A stretch of DNA of 64,000 nucleotides from Podarcis muralis (lineage: Eukaryota), in NCBI RefSeq assembly GCF_964188315.1, contig NC_135670.1:868001-932000 (forward strand), read 5' to 3'. Under the pieces are notes generated by a model, which was not told the origin of the DNA, searched no databases, and saw only the letters and a list, made by a program, of their open reading frames with translations. Shown in pieces: positions 5,169-17,181 of this stretch. Position 1 is the stretch's first letter. Every line of letters starts with the position of its first letter. A program made the position numbers and the translations under genes.

Positions 5169-5368
5169 NNNNNNNNNNNNNNNNNNNNNNNNNNNNNNNN
5201 NNNNNNNNNNNNNNNNNNNNNNNNNNNNNNNNNNNNNNNNNNNNNNNNNNNNNNNNNNNNNNNNNNNNNNNNNNNNNNNNNNNNNNNNNNNNNNNNNNNN
5301 NNNNNNNNNNNNNNNNNNNNNNNNNNNNNNNNNNNNNNNNNNNNNNNNNNNNNNNNNNNNNNNNNNNN
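5169..5368. other. Assembly gap (200 N)
   Basis: Run of N between a poly-C tract and a CT-rich tract, between the ETV3 promoter and its first visible coding exon. Confidence 1.
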
Positions 5369-10169: not shown

Positions 10170-10745
10170 TGAGCATATTGTGACAAGTCCTTCTTACTTC
10201 AGGAACCAGCTTTTTTGAATGTTTTTTATTAAGAATTTCAACATAACAATTTATCAAAAATACATTATCCTCATTTTCCCCCTCCCCATTTCCCCCCTCT
10301 AATCCCACCCCCAGACTTCCCTCAGCTCCTTTCTCTGGTTTTTCAGCACATATTATTCTCTGCATGTTATAAAATTGTAAGGATCCTTAATTTATCTATA
10401 TTACCAATAAAAAGTTTGTGTATGTTTATTCAAACCCTGCCAAGGAGTCCAGTTCATTTTGTTGTTTCTTTAAGTACTTCGTAAAAGGTTCCCATTCTTC
10501 TTTAAAATCACAGTTGTCCTTATCATGTAGTTTGTGTGCCAATTCCGCATAGTCCATCAGTTTTTCTTGCCATAGTCCTTTAGTCGGGATTTCCTCGTTC
10601 TTCCATCCTTGTGCTATTAAGACTCTTGCCACCGTTGTCGCATACATGAAAATGTAATCCCTAACAAGAATGCTTCAGGCTTTTTTACAAATGTTAATTG
10701 GAACATTTTCTTCAACTCATTGTATATCCTTTCCCAGAATTTTTA
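10170..10745 (-). mobile_element. L1 LINE 3' fragment
   Basis: MYATTVARVLIAQGWKNEEIPTKGLWQEKLMDYAELA...EEWEPFTKYL resembles the squamate L1 ORF2 C-terminus, followed by a G-rich 3' UTR and AATAAA. Confidence 0.8.
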
Positions 10746-10925
10746 AATTTTACTACAGTCCCACCACATATGGCACTGTGTGGTGGGTTCAAGCCGCAGC
10801 TTCTGTGGCCCACGATTGACCAGGCGGTGACCTCACAACTGGCCACAGATTCTGGCACTCTCGGTTCCCCAGAGATCCACGAGGATTCCAGGATGATTTC
10901 CTCTGCTCTCCTCCTCCGTTGCGCG

Positions 10926-11402
10926 ATGAAGTGCTGGTTCTCGTGCAACCACCGCTGCCGCAGGTAAAGCCCAGGAGAAGCATCAGGAATGGTCCTCAAG
11001 CCGAGGTGTTGCTGTGGTTCGTTCTCGGGGTTCATTCTGGTTCCCAGCTCAGCTTGCGTGGTTTTGCACACTTTTGCTTCAGGTCCTGAAGGAGCATCTC
11101 CACCCCCATCGCTCAGCCTGGACATTGAGGTCCAGCTCTGAGGGCCTTCTGGCGGTTCCCTCATTGTGAGAAGTGAGGTTACAGGGAACCAGGCAGAGGG
11201 CCTTCTCGGTGGTGGCACCCGCTCTGTGGAACGCCCTCCCGTCAGATGTCAAAGAAATAAACAACTACCAAACTTTTAGAAGACATCTGAAGGCAGCTCT
11301 CTTTAGGGAAGCTTTTAATGTTTAATAGGTTATTGTATTTAATATTCTGTTGAGAGCCGCCCAGAGTGGCTGGGGAAACCCAGCCAGATGGGCGGGGTAT
11401 AA

Positions 11403-11447
<45 letters not shown>

Positions 11448-12106
11448 TGCACCAATGCAGACCTCTGGCTTTGGGGGTGGGGGGATCAGTGTGGCCCTCC
11501 AGACCTCTTCCTGAGCTACACTCCTTGCCTGCCCTGCTTTGCACCCTGTCTGGGAATGGGTCTGATCCTGCCTTTTGCTTGCCTGGACGAAGAGAGGTGT
11601 TTGTGTGTGTACAAAGGTAAAAGTGAATGCTGGTTACTCCGCCCACTTCCACCCCTGGCCCAGCCCACCACCAGCATGCGGCCCTCAGAAGGGAGTCCAG
11701 AAAGGAATGCAGCCCTCAGGCTGGATGAAGCTTCCTGCAATGCATTATCGTGTCTCAGAACTGTAAAGTCGGAGGAGACCTCCAGCGGTCATCTAGTCCA
11801 ACCCGCTGCAGTGCGGGAAGCACAGGAGTCCCAACCATAGCTGTCAACTTTTCCCTTTTCTCGTGAGGAATCCTATTCGGAATAAGGGAATTTCCCTTAA
11901 AAAAAGGGAAACGTTGACAGCTATGGTCCCAACCTCTGCTTAAAATCCTCCAGGGAAGGAGAGTCCACCAGCCTCCAATAAGTCCATTCTAACACAATTT
12001 TAATCCTGTTGGGAGTTTGCTTTTTAACAATTGCATTTCATACGTATTTTGTCCGTTTGGAGTTGTGTAAGTTGCCTTGAGTTCCAATCCAGGAAAAAGG
12101 CAGGAG

Positions 12107-12140
<34 letters not shown>

Positions 12141-15100
12141 GTAGTAGTAGTAGTAGTAATGTAATAATAGCCCTGTTCCCACTCGGGTTCTAACCCTAAC
12201 CCTGCAGGGCAGGCCCCTTCCTCTGAGCCTGCCTTGGCAACTCCCCGCATGTGGGTCGGCTAGTTGACTGGGATCCTTTCTGAAGGGCCTGTCTGATCCG
12301 CCTCCTTTCCCTCTTCCAGATCCCGCTACGAGGAAGACCACAGGTGAGGAGGTGGGCGTCTCTGGGACCCTCGACTCGGGACCCTTTGGCTCTGTTGGGC
12401 CAAGGGTGGGAGGTGGAAGGCAAGAGAGACCATGCGGTTGGGGCAACATTTGGGGCTGGAGTGGGAACCCTCTGAAAAGCTCCCCGGGATTCAGTGGCTC
12501 TCTTGGAGGGGGAGAAACACACATCAATGCAATAAAGAAATAAATGAATGAAATACAATTACTGTGCGAATATTCGCTGCCATGAAGACTCCCGCTCTTC
12601 CTCCCAGGCTGTCAGAAATCAGGGAGGAGGGAAAGCGAGAGAAGGGGAAGCAGGATTGTGGGCCAAAGGAGGCGGCTGTCGGAGAAGGTGAGGAGCGGGT
12701 CTGGGGTGGGTGGGGGCTCAAAAGCCCCCCAAGGGTTTGCTCTCTGGAGAACTGCCTGCCCTGGATCGGGGCACCTGGGCAAGGCTTCCTGTGGGAGTCA
12801 GGCTGGGCGCTGGCGCAGACCCCAGGAGAGAGGAGCCTGGCGGACGAGGTGGCTGAAGGGGAAAGGCCTTGGCAGACAGGTGGGTGGGATGGAGGCTCAC
12901 CTGCAAACACAGGTGGTGCTTTACTTCAGCAGAGGCCCCTCCTTGGATCTCCATTGGGGGCGATGGCCCAGGAGAACCTTCTCCTCCCTTACTGCTGTAA
13001 TAAACAAAAATCTGCCCTTATTCCCTTACAGGGGACACAAGAGCCCTCATAGAGTCCTTTGCAGGATCTCCTTCAGTCAGAGAAAATAATAGAGGCCAAG
13101 CAGAGACTATTGAGAAGCAAAGCAGCTAGTAAGCCTGATCTTTATTGATCTGTTGCAACAGGGTGCTCCCCTCACACGCAGGAGAAGGAGGAGGACTCAG
13201 AACCCAGGTGTACCCACCCTTATAAAGATATTTTGAATTGCCCGCCCTGGATCTCCATACATCATACCTACATCACAGAAAGGGCAGTCTACAACAGAAA
13301 TCTGAGTGCTTTGTTTATCTCCTGTCTGCCAGCTTATCTGATAATGCCTTATCTGATTGCCTTTCCTGGTAGTCTGCCCGTTCCTTTGAAATGGTGAATA
13401 ACCAATTCCTGCCCTCCCTCCTTGCAGAGAAAACATTTTGTCCGTTTGGGAGTCAAAATGGTTTCAGGGCGGTCTATGTTTGTGCTTGGTTGGTACATTT
13501 ATGAACATTTATCATATATATAAGACCTTAATTTTTTTATTTCACTGCATACCCCCCCCCCCAGCACTTCTCCGATGAAAACAGGGACGTCCTCAGAAAA
13601 AGCGAGACGTTCCAGGATCAAATGGGAAACTGGGGCGGCTTCTGTAAATCCGGGGCTGTCCCTAGAAAATAGGGAGACTTGGAGGGTCTGTTGTTTTCTT
13701 TTCCAGGCTGTCCCCCTCGACGGGCGCCCAGAGCTGAGCCCCAGCCAGATGGGTCAGTTGAGGATGGTAAGCCCAGAGAGAGGGTGGGTGGGGGGACAGA
13801 GGGGGGTCGGGAGCAACCGGCCACCCTTCGCTTCCTGGCCTGCCGGGTTTCTCTTTTAGGTGACGATCCGGAAAGCCCTGCCAAGGCCCCCCAGCCCCTG
13901 GGGACCCTCCCCTCCAAGGAAGCACCCGCAGAAGCCCAGTCACCCTCTTCCCAACCTGCTTTCCCCATTCCCCATCATGAGATTCTGGGCTTCATTCAAG
14001 AGCTGGGGGCAGCACAGGAGCGCCAGTCTCGCCACCGCCGGGAGCGTAAGTAGGGGAGGGTGGGGCGCTCCCCCTCCGTCCCCCCACAAGACCCCTGTGC
14101 CTTCCTCCTCCTCCTCCGGGAGAAGGGTCTGCTCCAGCTTCCTGAGCATCTCTACTTCCGTAATAGTAACAACAACAACAACAACAACAACATATTATTT
14201 GTACCCTGCCCATCTGGCTGAGTTTCCGCAGCCACTCTGGGCGGCTTCCAACACCATATTAAAATACAATAGTCTATTAAACATTAAAAGCTTCCCTAAA
14301 CAGGGCTGCCTTCAGATGTCTTCTAAAAGTCTGGTAGTTGTTTTTCTCTTTGACATCTGGTGGGAGGCTGTTCCACAGGGCGGGTGCCACCACCAAGAAG
14401 GCCCTCTGCCTGGTTCCCTGTAGCTTTGCTTCTCGCAGGGAGGGAACTGCCAGAAGGCCCTCGGATCTGGACCTCAGTGTCCGGGCAGAACGATGGAGGT
14501 AGAGATGCTCCTTCAGGTATACTGGGTTGAGGCCGTTCAGGGCTTTAAATGTCAGCACCAACACTTTGAATTGTGCTCGGAAACGTACTGGGAGCCAATG
14601 TAGGTCTTTCAAGACCGGTGTTATATGGTCTCAGCAGCGGCTCCCAGTCACCAGTCTAGCTGCCGCATTCTGGATTAGTTGTAGTTTCCGGGTCACCTTC
14701 AAAGGTAGCCCCACGTAGAGCACATTGCAGTAGTCCAAGCGAGAGATAACTAGAGCATGCAAGATGCTAGTCCTTAAGGAAGCTGCAAAGATCTGGGGTG
14801 TGTGTGTGGGGGGGTTTTGGCGGTGGTGGTGGGGAGACAACAGCTGCCGAAACCTCAGGAGCCACAGAGGGGCAATGGATGAATGTTTTGGGGGGCTTCG
14901 GTGCCCTGCCTTGCCCCTCCCGGGGTCAAGTGAGACTAGAGCAACTCACACAGAGGCTGGGTGGCCAATTGTCAGGGATTGTTTTGCTGTGATCCTTGCA
15001 TTGCAGAGGGTGGGTTTACATGACCCGCTGGGGTCCCTTCCAATTCTATAAAAATAGCAAAAGGGGTTTTTTTTTGGCTTAGGGCCCTCGTATTCTACAG

Positions 15101-16037
15101 GACGGCCTCTCCTGGTCTGCTCTGCAGAGGACCTTCTTAAGGTCCATGAATAACCATAGTTTAGAGGTCCTGGGCCCAAAGGAAGTCAGATTATCCTCCA
15201 CCAGGGCCAGGGCCTTCTCAGTGGTGGCTCCAACCTGGTGGAATGCTCTGTCCCAGGAGACCAGGGCCCTGCAGGATTTAACCTCCTTCCGTCGGGCCTG
15301 TAAGACAGAGCTATTCCGCATGGCCTTTAATTTGAATTCAGCCTGATCTTTTATTTCTCTTCCCTCCCCCTCCCCTTTTATGAAGATCACCTGCTCTGAG
15401 ACCCCACAGCTAATTCTCCCCTGGTCTCCTCGCTGGCCCAAGTAGGACCAATTCAGCCAGCTAGCCCTGGGGATTATCTAATTGATTTTTGATTTTTGAA
15501 TTTTATTGTTATTCATTGTTTTCATACTGTATTTTATGCTGCATTTATAATTGTTTTAAATATGTTGTTAGCCGCCCCAAGCCCAGTTTTTGAACCGGGA
15601 AGGGCGGGGTATAAATAAAAAAATATTATTATTTATTATTTTTAAAAATCCACCTTGCTTTTTGCAAATTGACGCAAGCCTTCCCCCCACGCCAGCTGCC
15701 AATGTTCCTCCTGTTCTGTTTGCAGCAAGCGGGGTGCCGGATCTGCCCCTCCCTGAAGGCTGCTCCTCTCCCCGCAGGGAAAAAGGACCTCCGCAGCTGC
15801 CACGACTGCCTGAAGTCTGTCAAGACCTTAAAGGAGAACCTGCAGGAGGTCCAGGGGCGGCTCTGGAAGGTGGAAGCCAAGCTGGGCATCCGCGTGCCCC
15901 CCCACGAGCTGGAGCTGGAGGAGGACGAGAAGGAGCCCCCCAAGGAAGGAGGAGGGGAGGGCGAGGAGAGCCCCCCGGCCTGGGCGCCCCTTCCAGTGCC
16001 CCCCCAGCCTGGAGGTGGGGCAGAGGGCAGCTGGTGA
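10926..16037 (+). CDS. Unidentified six-exon protein-coding gene with a C-terminal coiled coil. Exons 10926(or 10770)-10963, 12320-12343, 12608-12687, 13707-13766, 13860-14045, 15778-16037.
   Basis: All five introns are GT-AG with pyrimidine tracts, and phases 2-2-1-1-1 chain without a stop into 215 aa (267 aa from ATG 10770). The last exon has GC3-rich codons (LKENLQEVQGRLWKVEAKLG). AATAAA lies at 16155 and 16172. The first exon is the least certain. Confidence 0.7.
11085..11450 (+). mobile_element. L2-clade LINE 3' fragment
   Basis: Same sequence family as 595-985, with an (AAT)n tail. Confidence 0.85.
11836..11925. mobile_element. 90-bp hAT MITE
   Basis: TIR CATAGCTGTCAAC / GTTGACAGCTATG; 8-bp TSD GTCCCAAC at 11828-11835 and 11926-11933. 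Confidence 0.85.
12996..13544 (-). mobile_element. Solo LTR in an intron of the unidentified gene
   Basis: TG...CA termini on the minus strand, 4-bp TSD CTGC, AATAAA and TATA-like motifs on the minus strand, homologous to 7719 and 60976. Confidence 0.88.
14165..14770 (-). mobile_element. L2-clade LINE 3' fragment
   Basis: MKDLHWLPVRFRAQFKVLVLTFKALNGL...[15 protein letters not shown]...[10 protein letters not shown]. Confidence 0.9.
15060..15630 (+). mobile_element. L2-clade LINE, second family, 3' fragment
   Basis: [38 protein letters not shown]; same family as 24715-25180. Confidence 0.8.
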
Positions 16038-17181
16038 AGATGCCAAGCCAGAGACGGAAGCAGGCGGACCCAGCCCACCGTTCCAGCGGCCGGGGGGTGG
16101 GGGGGGGGTGGGCTTCCTGAAAACAACAAAAGAAAGGCCTTTATTTTTTCATTTAATAAATATATACCTTGAATAAACTTCCCACGGTCAGTTTGCAGAC
16201 AACCCCCCCAAAAGGTGAAATACCATGTGAGCGATCAATAACTACACTGGTTGGGTAGCCACTTCTCAGGTGGAGATACCTGCATTGCGCGGGGTCAGAC
16301 TAGATGGCCCTTGGGGTCCCTTCTGACAATCCTGCGGCTCTAAGCAGCCTTAACCTTGTTCTAGCCCCAGAGCCCCACCGGGTGACCCTCCAGGGGCCAT
16401 GTGCCAGAATGGTGGGAGGGCGTCTCTGTGGCTGGAAGGGCATCCAGCCTTTGATTCTCATATCTGAAGATTTTTCTTTTTTTGAATATGCTTTTTATTA
16501 AGTTTCATTTTAGATACACCAACAAACAAATATATCAAATATTTTTACATCTATCTTACTTTATGCTCCATAGAGCCATTGACTTCCCTCCTTCCCTTCC
16601 GCAGGTTTTCTTATTCCAATCTTTAATTCACTGATTCATTAGTAAAAGACTAAACCATGACATAAGATTTATTTCAGTCCTGCTAACGTCTTCAGATTTC
16701 TACAGTTCTCACTTACACAGACCATAAATTTGCTCCATTCTTTTTGGTACCTGAAGATTTTTCAGTCTTTATCACTTAATCTACATTTCTTAATTTCTCT
16801 ATTACTTTTAATTTCCCTTAACTAACAATTCTCTTCATAATCCTCTCTGCAATATTTAGCATAGTCCTACTAGCGTGATCTGTTTATTACAATTGCTTCT
16901 CAAGTAGTTCAGCTATCCCGCAGGATCCTTCCTGTCATTTTATCTAATTCTGCACAGCCCATTAATTTCATCTGCCTCCCCCCCCCCTCTTCTTTTTGGG
17001 TTCATTATTGACATTTGATTGTATTTGATTGTCCAATTAATAAATCTTATTAAAAAGAAAGAAAGGAGCCTCACGAAACGCCATCCCTAAAAGAAACCTC
17101 CACCTGCGCCTCCCAGATGCAAAGAGCACCTCTCTCCTTCCACTTCCCTCGGCAAACAGCTGTTTTCCTCCCTCCCGGGTT

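What the first reader, a model, noticed from the sequence alone, without database searches (positions are those of the whole stretch)
10770..16180. Unrecognised six-exon gene between ETV3 and MRPL24
Seen: six segments with canonical splice sites chain in phase into MKCWFSCNHRCRRSRYEEDHRLSEIREEGKREKGKQDCGPKEAAVGEGCPPRRAPRAEPQPDGSVEDGDDPESPAKAPQPLGTLPSKEAPAEAQSPSSQPAFPIPHHEILGFIQELGAAQERQSRHRRERKKDLRSCHDCLKSVKTLKENLQEVQGRLWKVEAKLGIRVPPHELELEEDEKEPP...GSW*, followed by two AATAAA signals. The protein has a Cys/Arg-rich N-terminus, a disordered Pro/acidic middle, and a helix-CxxC-coiled coil. It is invisible in the ORF track because it is split and includes a 24-nt microexon. I recognise no family, and it has no PWWP domain, so it is not the HDGF found at this position in mammals. 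Inference: a lineage-restricted or fast-evolving gene, possibly lipid-anchored through the N-terminal cysteines and oligomerising through the coiled coil.
Basis: partly seen in the sequence, partly recalled or inferred. Interest (0 to 1): 0.85.

Follow-up and report, generated by a model that had tools for sequence, protein, structure and literature searches.

The report
Uncharacterised lizard-and-snake coiled-coil gene
The six-exon gene is real and under coding constraint, and it is already predicted as an unnamed locus in a sister wall lizard. It belongs to an unstudied protein family found so far only in lizards and snakes, and its function is unknown.

Summary
Six GT-AG exons (10926-16037, +) join into an intact 215-aa ORF followed by two AATAAA signals.

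- **Existing annotation:** the same model exists in RefSeq as "uncharacterized protein LOC128404213" of Podarcis raffonei (95% identical), also between ETV3 and MRPL24. The gene is unnamed, not unrecognised.
- **Coding constraint:** dN/dS against that species is 0.21 (14 synonymous, 10 non-synonymous changes; p=2e-4).
- **Transcription:** an RNA-run contig from a related lizard starts exactly at the exon-6 acceptor and ends at the poly(A) signal. No junction-spanning read was seen, and two bulk RNA runs were silent.
- **Family range:** homologues turned up only in squamates, from geckos to snakes. None matches Pfam, PDB or a known fold.
- **Two ancient paralogues:** a short one (this gene; ETV3–X–MRPL24) and a long one with a duplicated module (HDGF–X–NES).
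- **Conserved features:** an N-terminal Cys-rich basic motif (MGGC[WF]SC in long forms); a roughly 60-residue helix with CxxC on core heptad positions; and an invariant VPPxEL plus acidic tail exactly 32 residues after the CxxC.

My functional reading is inference only: an acylated, oligomeric scaffold with a metal or redox Cys site. Interest is moderate.

The parts
10817..10835 (.). Conserved upstream element TGACC-N6-TGACC, about 90-110 nt before the ATG. Possible promoter element.
   Evidence: Identical in P. raffonei. It lies inside the only block upstream of the ATG that still aligns with Sceloporus. Its function was not tested.
10926..10963 (+). Exon 1, coding part: the start codon and the Cys-rich basic N-terminus (Cys3, Cys7, Cys11).
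   Evidence: Same start as RefSeq P0001. The Met is conserved at this motif in the snake, iguanian, skink and gecko orthologues, and it is the first residue of many long paralogues. In-frame ATGs at 10770 and 10893 are not excluded as starts.
12320..12343 (+). Exon 2, a 24-nt microexon encoding S-R-Y-E-E-D-H-R.
   Evidence: AG/GT sites in the window and in L001. The S-x-Y...R motif recurs in Vipera, Sceloporus and the gecko long paralogues.
12608..12687 (+). Exon 3, a charged and probably disordered segment.
   Evidence: pLDDT is about 55-60 beyond residue 32.
13707..13766 (+). Exon 4, Pro/acidic linker. The conserved V-G-E-G-C motif spans the exon 3/4 junction.
   Evidence: Intron 4 (13767-13859, 93 nt) is in frame and free of stops.
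13860..14045 (+). Exon 5: Pro-rich linker, then the first half of the conserved helical module (from 13973).
   Evidence: Exon-5 words are held by 12 presumptive RNA runs. One contig (X5) crosses both borders unspliced.
15778..16037 (+). Exon 6: second half of the module, the acidic/Pro tail and the stop codon (16035-16037).
   Evidence: 96% identical to P0001. The same intron position just before K-[KR]-D-L-R is seen in Sceloporus and in unspliced Logan ORFs. The X1 contig starts at 15778.
15798..15809 (+). CxxC motif (Cys137, Cys140) on heptad positions a and d of the helix.
   Evidence: The first Cys is invariant and the second is present in at least 90% of 20-32 family members. Heptad register.
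15894..15911 (+). V-P-P-x-E-L motif that opens the acidic tail.
   Evidence: G, V, P, P, E and L are nearly invariant. It lies 32 residues after the CxxC in every member that has both.
16038..16177 (+). 3'UTR with AATAAA at 16155-16160 and 16172-16177.
   Evidence: The RNA-run contig ends at 16177. It diverges 9% from P. raffonei, against 3.7% for the CDS.

Best explanation
**Shown.** This is an intact, spliced, protein-coding gene. It is the orthologue of RefSeq LOC128404213 (Podarcis raffonei) and the "short" member of a two-paralogue protein family found here only in squamates.

The 215-aa (about 24 kDa) product has four parts:
1. A basic N-terminus with three cysteines.
2. A poorly conserved acidic, Pro-rich linker, probably disordered.
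3. A conserved helical module of about 60 residues, with a CxxC pair on core (a/d) heptad positions.
4. An invariant VPPxEL motif followed by an acidic tail.

The long paralogue carries a second, degenerate copy of the module. It lies between HDGF and NES.

**Inferred (about 0.3).** The N-terminal cysteines are S-acylated. The ancestral form, still seen in long paralogues, also had a myristoylated Gly2. This would tether the protein to membranes. The helix would oligomerise as a coiled coil or a hairpin dimer. The four or more clustered thiols would then bind a metal ion or form redox-sensitive links. The VPPxEL-acidic tail would dock a partner. On this reading the protein is a small membrane-associated scaffold, not an enzyme.
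For: - **Gene model and annotation:**
- **Purifying selection:** dN/dS 0.21 with 14 synonymous and 10 non-synonymous changes. The module is 54-64% identical to the snake, iguanian, cordylid and skink orthologues and 39% to the gecko one.
- **Transcription:** the X1 contig runs from the exon-6 acceptor to the poly(A) signal, and its coding differences are all synonymous. At least 14 presumptive RNA runs hold exon 6 plus the UTR.
- **Family range:** 23 phmmer hits among 1.84 billion representatives, plus 32 profile hits. Every named one is a squamate.
- **Synteny, short paralogue:** ETV3(-)/short/MRPL24/RRNAD1 in Podarcis and Crotalus; ETV3/short in Sceloporus.
- **Synteny, long paralogue:** HDGF/long/NES in Eublepharis and Anolis; the same layout in Thamnophis, where the upstream 266-aa gene has no Pfam hit on record.
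- **Internal duplication:** hhalign of module 1 against module 2 gives probability 92.7 and E 4e-7, with the Cys in register.
- **Structure:** AlphaFold2 gives helix 108-167 at pLDDT 86-94. The heptad register is continuous, with Cys137 at a and Cys140 at d.
- **N-terminal motif:** shared with long paralogues that begin MGGC[WF]SC.
Against: - None of the five predicted junctions was seen in reads. Two bulk RNA runs were silent, and two contigs are unspliced at the exon 4 and exon 5 borders.
- The start codon is not fixed. In-frame ATGs at 10770 and 10893 sit in an open frame that shows 5 synonymous-type against 2 non-synonymous-type changes versus P. raffonei.
- The N-terminal cysteines are lost in the snake and Sceloporus orthologues, so acylation cannot be essential for every member.
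- No signal peptide, enzyme fold or known domain gives a handle on function.
- The AlphaFold2 model is a monomer, so the oligomeric state and any metal binding are pure inference.
- Module 1 of the long paralogue is modelled as a helix-Pro-helix hairpin. A continuous helix through the CxxC is therefore not assured.
Confidence: 0.8

Rival explanations
1. It is a strongly diverged orthologue of a named vertebrate gene, so the family is not squamate-restricted. Candidates are CCDC184/DUF4677-like proteins or the unnamed chordate cluster typified by zebrafish si:ch211-153b23.7.
For: - The language-model search puts CCDC184 first among named clusters (score 0.80-0.81, 155-170 shared features).
- The structure search of the long paralogue puts the chordate cluster "Si:ch211-153b23.7" first (TM 0.49).
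- The only profile search depended on shared 5-residue words, so distant relatives could have been missed.
Against: - Scores under 0.9 and TM under 0.5 lie within the range the tools report for chance hits.
- PF15726 matched none of 20 members at E<=1.
- phmmer read all 1.84 billion representatives and returned only squamate proteins among the named hits.
- No fold hit is significant.
Confidence: 0.12
2. It is a nuclear basic-region plus zipper type regulator that binds nucleic acid or chromatin, not a membrane scaffold. The Arg/Lys-rich stretch just before the CxxC would be the binding surface and the zipper the dimeriser.
For: - The helix region has pI 9.7, with an Arg/Lys-rich stretch (R-H-R-R-E-R-K-K) directly N-terminal to four regular heptads.
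- One long paralogue was auto-named "myb-related transcription factor, partner of profilin-like".
- The snake and Sceloporus orthologues lack the N-terminal cysteines.
Against: - No bZIP, Myb or other DNA-binding Pfam family matched any of 20 members.
- The basic stretch is weaker and variable in the paralogues.
- The N-terminal MGGC[WF]SC motif of many paralogues is an acylation-type signal.
- Other automatic names in the family (caskin-like, FOXC1-like, MamJ-like) have no matching Pfam domain on record.
Confidence: 0.12
3. The chain is a chance or annotation artefact, or a decaying gene. On this view the locus makes no functional protein in this species.
For: No junction-spanning reads were seen. 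Two bulk RNA runs had zero depth, and some contigs are unspliced. Gnomon-type models can be partly ab initio.
Against: - The ORF and all ten splice sites are intact in two species.
- dN/dS is 0.21 with p=2.5e-4.
- The module is conserved across squamates in a syntenic position.
- A contig from an RNA run starts exactly at the exon-6 acceptor.
Confidence: 0.03

Closest known systems
RefSeq LOC128404213 (Podarcis raffonei), with the uncharacterised squamate homologues (for example Crotalus tigris LOC120296655, Sceloporus undulatus LOC121915604, Anolis carolinensis LOC134294356)
   Same: Same six-exon structure, start and stop. 95% protein identity. Same position between ETV3 and MRPL24. Same module, CxxC and VPPxEL motifs.
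   Different: Ten substitutions and a 2-aa indel. None of these proteins has a name, a Pfam family, a structure or a paper.
Dually acylated or palmitoylated small scaffold proteins (GAP-43-type N-terminal Cys cluster; Src-family-type MGC N-terminus). Comparison from general knowledge.
   Same: An N-terminal Cys cluster beside hydrophobic and basic residues. Paralogues have Gly2, a small residue at position 6 and nearby cysteines.
   Different: No sequence homology. Acylation is untested. This gene has Lys, not Gly, at position 2. The snake and Sceloporus orthologues lack the cysteines.
Coiled coils with core or apex cysteines: the Rad50 zinc hook (CxxC at a hairpin apex) and the COMP/thrombospondin CxxC disulfide ring. 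Comparison from general knowledge.
   Same: A CxxC pair embedded midway in a long helical segment with two arms of about 25-29 residues. The homologous module 1 is modelled as a hairpin that breaks at exactly this point.
   Different: No homology. AlphaFold2 models this module as a continuous helix. There is no signal peptide, so constitutive disulfides are unlikely. Metal binding is untested.
   Same: Genomic neighbourhood only. In mammals (from my knowledge of the human map) HDGF abuts MRPL24. In squamates HDGF abuts the long paralogue.
   Different: No PWWP domain in this gene and no HDGF-like sequence in the window. One Gekko kuhli model joins HDGF and the long paralogue.

Membership tests
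Unnamed squamate family (LOC128404213-like), short paralogue | C-terminal helical module with R-x-C-x-x-C and conserved Leu/Arg/Glu positions | tested here: met
   Exon 6 is 96% identical to P0001. The invariant and near-invariant columns (R, C, C, L, R, L, E) are all present in the window protein.
Unnamed squamate family (LOC128404213-like), short paralogue | G-x-x-V-P-P-x-E-L motif 32 residues after the CxxC, followed by an acidic tail | tested here: met
   Cys137 and Val169 in the window protein are 32 residues apart. The same spacing holds in every member that has both motifs.
Unnamed squamate family (LOC128404213-like), short paralogue | Position between ETV3 (opposite strand) and MRPL24 (same strand) | tested here: met
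   The window is collinear with the annotated P. raffonei locus L001. Crotalus has the same order.
Unnamed squamate family (LOC128404213-like), short paralogue | Phase-1 intron immediately before K-[KR]-D-L-R | tested here: met
   Junction 14045/15778. The last exon of Sceloporus starts at the same residue. Unspliced Logan ORFs change character at the same point.
HDGF / PWWP family | N-terminal PWWP domain (PF00855) | tested here: not met
   No PF00855 hit in the exon translations or in the orthologue and 19 relatives. tblastn with a PWWP-containing protein found only the module in the window.
CCDC184 (PF15726, DUF4677) | Match to the DUF4677 profile | tested here: not met
   None of 20 members matched at E<=1. 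The only link is a language-model score of 0.80-0.81, within the chance range.
MYPOP (Myb-related transcription factor, partner of profilin) | Myb/SANT-like DNA-binding domain | tested here: not met
   No Myb-type Pfam hit in P0006 or any other member. The name is an automatic label on one snake paralogue.
bZIP transcription factors | bZIP profile match, including the basic-region signature | tested here: not met
   No bZIP Pfam hit. The basic stretch is not conserved in the paralogues.
N-terminally acylated proteins (functional class) | Covalent palmitate or myristate on the N-terminal Cys or Gly | not testable with these tools
   Only the motif is seen. This needs acyl-exchange or metabolic labelling.

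The most novel reading that the evidence does not exclude
A protein family that arose in or before the squamate ancestor and has no detectable relatives elsewhere. Its two founding copies sit at the two junctions (HDGF|NES and ETV3|MRPL24) of the rearrangement that separates the squamate gene order from the mammalian one. It encodes lipid-anchored coiled-coil or hairpin proteins with a buried CxxC metal or redox site, and it has expanded to dozens of copies in at least one lizard lineage (Hemicordylus).
Probability: 0.25. Interest if true: 0.55.

Novelty: new member of a known kind. Interest (0 to 1): 0.35.

Why it matters
For annotating this genome, it adds a real protein-coding gene where a plain ORF scan shows none.

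More broadly, it points to an undescribed family restricted to squamates. The family has a sharply conserved module (CxxC plus VPPxEL), no Pfam entry, no structure and no paper. It has two ancient syntenic paralogues and a large expansion in one cordylid lizard.

Such lineage-restricted families are candidates for clade-specific biology. Nothing here points to a particular process, so the present value is descriptive.

Tried and rejected
- **Pfam:** scans of the exon pieces and of 20 family members gave nothing at or near threshold.
- **PDB sequences:** a profile search gave nothing significant. The best hits were mL77 (E 0.02) and CsoR (E 0.83).
- **Fold searches:** Foldseek of the long-paralogue model against PDB, Swiss-Prot AFDB, AFDB clusters and the Atlas gave no significant match. 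The short-paralogue model was not searched, because one long helix is uninformative.
- **Atlas leads:** CCDC184, and the si:ch211-153b23.7 cluster. CCDC184 is rejected at the sequence level. The zebrafish-type cluster could not be tested, because no sequence was returned and no paper mentions it.
- **BLASTP:** comparing the short module with module 1, and comparing the N-termini, found no significant alignment. Profile-profile comparison was needed to show the module duplication.
- **Literature:** searches by locus names and by topic found nothing.
- **Other copies in the window:** a search for a second family member or HDGF in the window found none.
- **Known short motifs:** reading the VPPxEL tail as a TRAF, B56, SIM or clathrin-box motif was considered and dropped, because the variable position does not fit any of those consensus patterns across the family. 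This judgement rests on memory of the motifs, not on a tool.
Full report
**1. The observation**

The six segments were read from the window and joined by script. They are 10926-10963, 12320-12343, 12608-12687, 13707-13766, 13860-14045 and 15778-16037.
- Every acceptor is AG behind a pyrimidine tract, and every donor is GT (GTAAAG, GTGAGG, GTGAGG, GTAAGC, GTAAGT).
- Exon 2 is a 24-nt microexon.
- AATAAA lies at 16155-16160 and 16172-16177.
- Intron 4 (93 nt) is in frame and has no stop, so its retention would keep the frame.

**2. Independent gene model and context**

A search with exon 6 found one protein, at 96% identity: RefSeq "uncharacterized protein LOC128404213 [Podarcis raffonei]" (P0001, 217 aa).
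- It has the same first and last residues as the window protein and is 95% identical overall.
- Its locus (L001) reads ETV3 (Ets, minus strand), this gene, MRPL24 (KOW/L24), then RRNAD1-type methyltransferase.
- All splice dinucleotides are conserved in L001.
- The gene is therefore unnamed, not unrecognised.

**3. Coding constraint**

The window CDS differs from P. raffonei by 24 substitutions and one 6-nt indel.
- Fourteen changes are synonymous and ten are not. This gives dN 0.021, dS 0.099 and dN/dS 0.21.
- Under neutrality 23% of changes would be synonymous. The excess has p=2.5e-4.
- CDS divergence is 3.7%, the well-aligned introns 3.1-5.4%, and the 3'UTR 9%.
- Deeper in the tree the N-terminal and linker parts drop to 30-42% identity. 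The module stays at 54-64% in snake, iguanian, cordylid and skink orthologues and at 39% in the gecko orthologue.

**4. RNA evidence**

- Two bulk RNA runs of the window's species label had no depth on any exon.
- A presumptive RNA run of a related organism (X1) holds a 395-nt contig that begins at 15778, the first base of exon 6, and ends at 16177, by the poly(A) signal. A de Bruijn contig starting exactly at an exon's first base is what is expected when two upstream contexts, spliced and unspliced, meet there.
- The three coding differences in that contig (15818, 15830, 15848) are all synonymous third positions. The 140-nt UTR carries four substitutions and two indels.
- Other contigs cross the exon-4 acceptor (X1) and both borders of exon 5 (X5) unspliced.
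- No junction-spanning record was listed.
- Exon-5 words are held by 12 presumptive RNA runs, and words from exon 6 plus the UTR by at least 14, under four organism labels.
- Transcription is thus supported. The five junctions rest on comparative evidence, not on reads.

**5. The family**

- phmmer with P0001 against 1.84 billion representatives gave 23 hits. A profile search gave 32.
- Every hit that carries a name is from a squamate: Podarcis, Hemicordylus, Lerista, Sceloporus, Anolis, Vipera, Crotalus, Thamnophis, Liasis, Candoia, Eublepharis, Paroedura, Sphaerodactylus and Gekko. Names such as "MYPOP-like", "caskin-1-like" and "FOXC1-like" are automatic labels. No matching domain was found.
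- There are two types. Short proteins of about 200 aa are orthologues of this gene. They lie next to ETV3 in Sceloporus, and between ETV3 and MRPL24-RRNAD1-ISG20L2 in Crotalus.
- Long proteins of about 260-450 aa lie between HDGF and nestin in Eublepharis and Anolis. Thamnophis has the same layout, but there the upstream 266-aa gene has no Pfam hit on record. One Gekko kuhli model even joins the HDGF PWWP domain to the long paralogue.
- The long form contains a second, N-terminal copy of the module. Profile-profile comparison of the two copies gives probability 92.7 and E 4e-7 over 56 columns, with the cysteine in register.
- Hemicordylus capensis has dozens of long-type copies on several chromosomes and three short-type loci.

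From my own knowledge of the human map (NES-CRABP2-ISG20L2-RRNAD1-MRPL24-HDGF), the two squamate paralogues sit at the two junctions made by moving the MRPL24 block. The long one kept HDGF as its neighbour and the short one kept MRPL24. This suggests a single ancestral copy between HDGF and MRPL24 that was duplicated with the rearrangement. That is inference.

**6. Anatomy of the protein**

- *N-terminus.* It reads M-K-C-W-F-S-C-N-H-R-C-R-R-S-R-Y. The same motif opens gecko and cordylid long paralogues as MGGCFSCQRCRSKY and MGGCWSCVAC, and a snake one as MGSWLSC. Gly2 with a small residue at position 6 and nearby Cys is the classical myristoylation-plus-palmitoylation pattern (general knowledge). 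This gene has Lys2, so only S-acylation is possible. The snake and Sceloporus orthologues have lost the cysteines.
- *Structure.* AlphaFold2 on the orthologue, with a 32-row alignment, gives helix 4-32 (pLDDT about 80). Residues 33-107 are disordered. Residues 108-167 form one helix (pLDDT 86-94), and the tail is disordered.
- *Heptad register.* The register is continuous along that helix. It places Cys137 at a, Cys140 at d, and Leu/Val at the following a/d positions. In any parallel oligomer the thiols would face the core.
- *Long paralogue.* Module 1 is modelled as a helix-Phe-Pro-helix hairpin that breaks exactly where module 2 has its CxxC. Module 2 is modelled as one helix. A hairpin with the CxxC at its apex is therefore an open alternative.
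- *Tail motif.* G-x-x-V-P-P-x-E-L is nearly invariant. It always starts 32 residues after the first Cys, and an acidic run follows.

**7. Comparison with known families**

- No Pfam family matched.
- No PDB sequence matched.
- No fold matched in PDB, Swiss-Prot AFDB, AFDB clusters or the Atlas.
- Language-model neighbours (CCDC184 at 0.80-0.81) and a structural neighbour (the si:ch211-153b23.7 cluster at TM 0.49) are within the chance range those tools state. The first also fails the Pfam test.
- No paper mentions the loci.

**8. Open points**

- The start codon. The frame is open from 10698, with ATGs at 10770 and 10893. In the 67 upstream codons the two Podarcis species differ by 5 synonymous-type and 2 non-synonymous-type changes (p=0.013).
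- Against an extension: the Met at the motif is conserved in all orthologues, it is residue 1 of many paralogues, and RefSeq starts there.
- Only a roughly 25-nt upstream block (including TGACC-N6-TGACC at 10817-10835) still aligns with Sceloporus. That looks more like a promoter element than like coding sequence.
- Tissue of expression, oligomeric state, acylation and metal binding are all untested.

**9. Verdict**

The gene is real, intact, constrained and already predicted in a sister species. It belongs to an undescribed family that appears restricted to squamates. Interest is moderate.

Noticed in passing
window 10698-10925: The reading frame of exon 1 stays open for 76 codons upstream, with in-frame ATGs at 10770 and 10893. 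Against P. raffonei this stretch shows 5 synonymous-type and 2 non-synonymous-type changes. A longer N-terminus is not excluded.
   Followed up: partly
window 10817-10835: TGACCAGGCGGTGACCTCA, two TGACC half-sites 6 nt apart, is identical in P. raffonei. It lies in the only upstream block that still aligns with Sceloporus. It could be a nuclear-receptor-type promoter element.
   Followed up: partly
window 13767-13859: Intron 4 is 93 nt, in frame and free of stops. Its retention would insert 31 residues without breaking the ORF.
   Followed up: no
window 11080-11410, 11835-11925, 14193-14761 (introns 1 and 5): Interspersed repeat copies, some beside (AAT)n, (AAC)n or similar simple repeats. They recur at many places in the window and in L001. 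They attract deep RNA coverage with loose ends, which is reads from other copies and not expression of this gene.
   Followed up: partly
L003, L006, L007 (Eublepharis, Anolis, Thamnophis): The long paralogue lies between HDGF and nestin in all three (in Thamnophis the upstream gene is HDGF by position only). Together with ETV3-short-MRPL24, the two paralogues sit at both junctions of the rearrangement relative to the mammalian order.
   Followed up: partly
P0047 (Gekko kuhli, 493 aa): This deposited model joins a complete HDGF PWWP protein to the long paralogue. It is either a merged annotation of adjacent genes or a read-through transcript.
   Followed up: no
Hemicordylus capensis proteins P0016-P0021 and P0034-P0057: A large expansion of long-type copies on several chromosomes. 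Many carry tandem repeats of about 20 aa (ILEEELNEE-TSVPGSLPGP-like) between the N-terminal MGGCWSC and the modules. Some copies lack the CxxC or VPPxEL.
   Followed up: no
window 5169-5368: A run of 200 N, an assembly gap or masked stretch, between the ETV3 side and this gene. It was left untouched.
   Followed up: no
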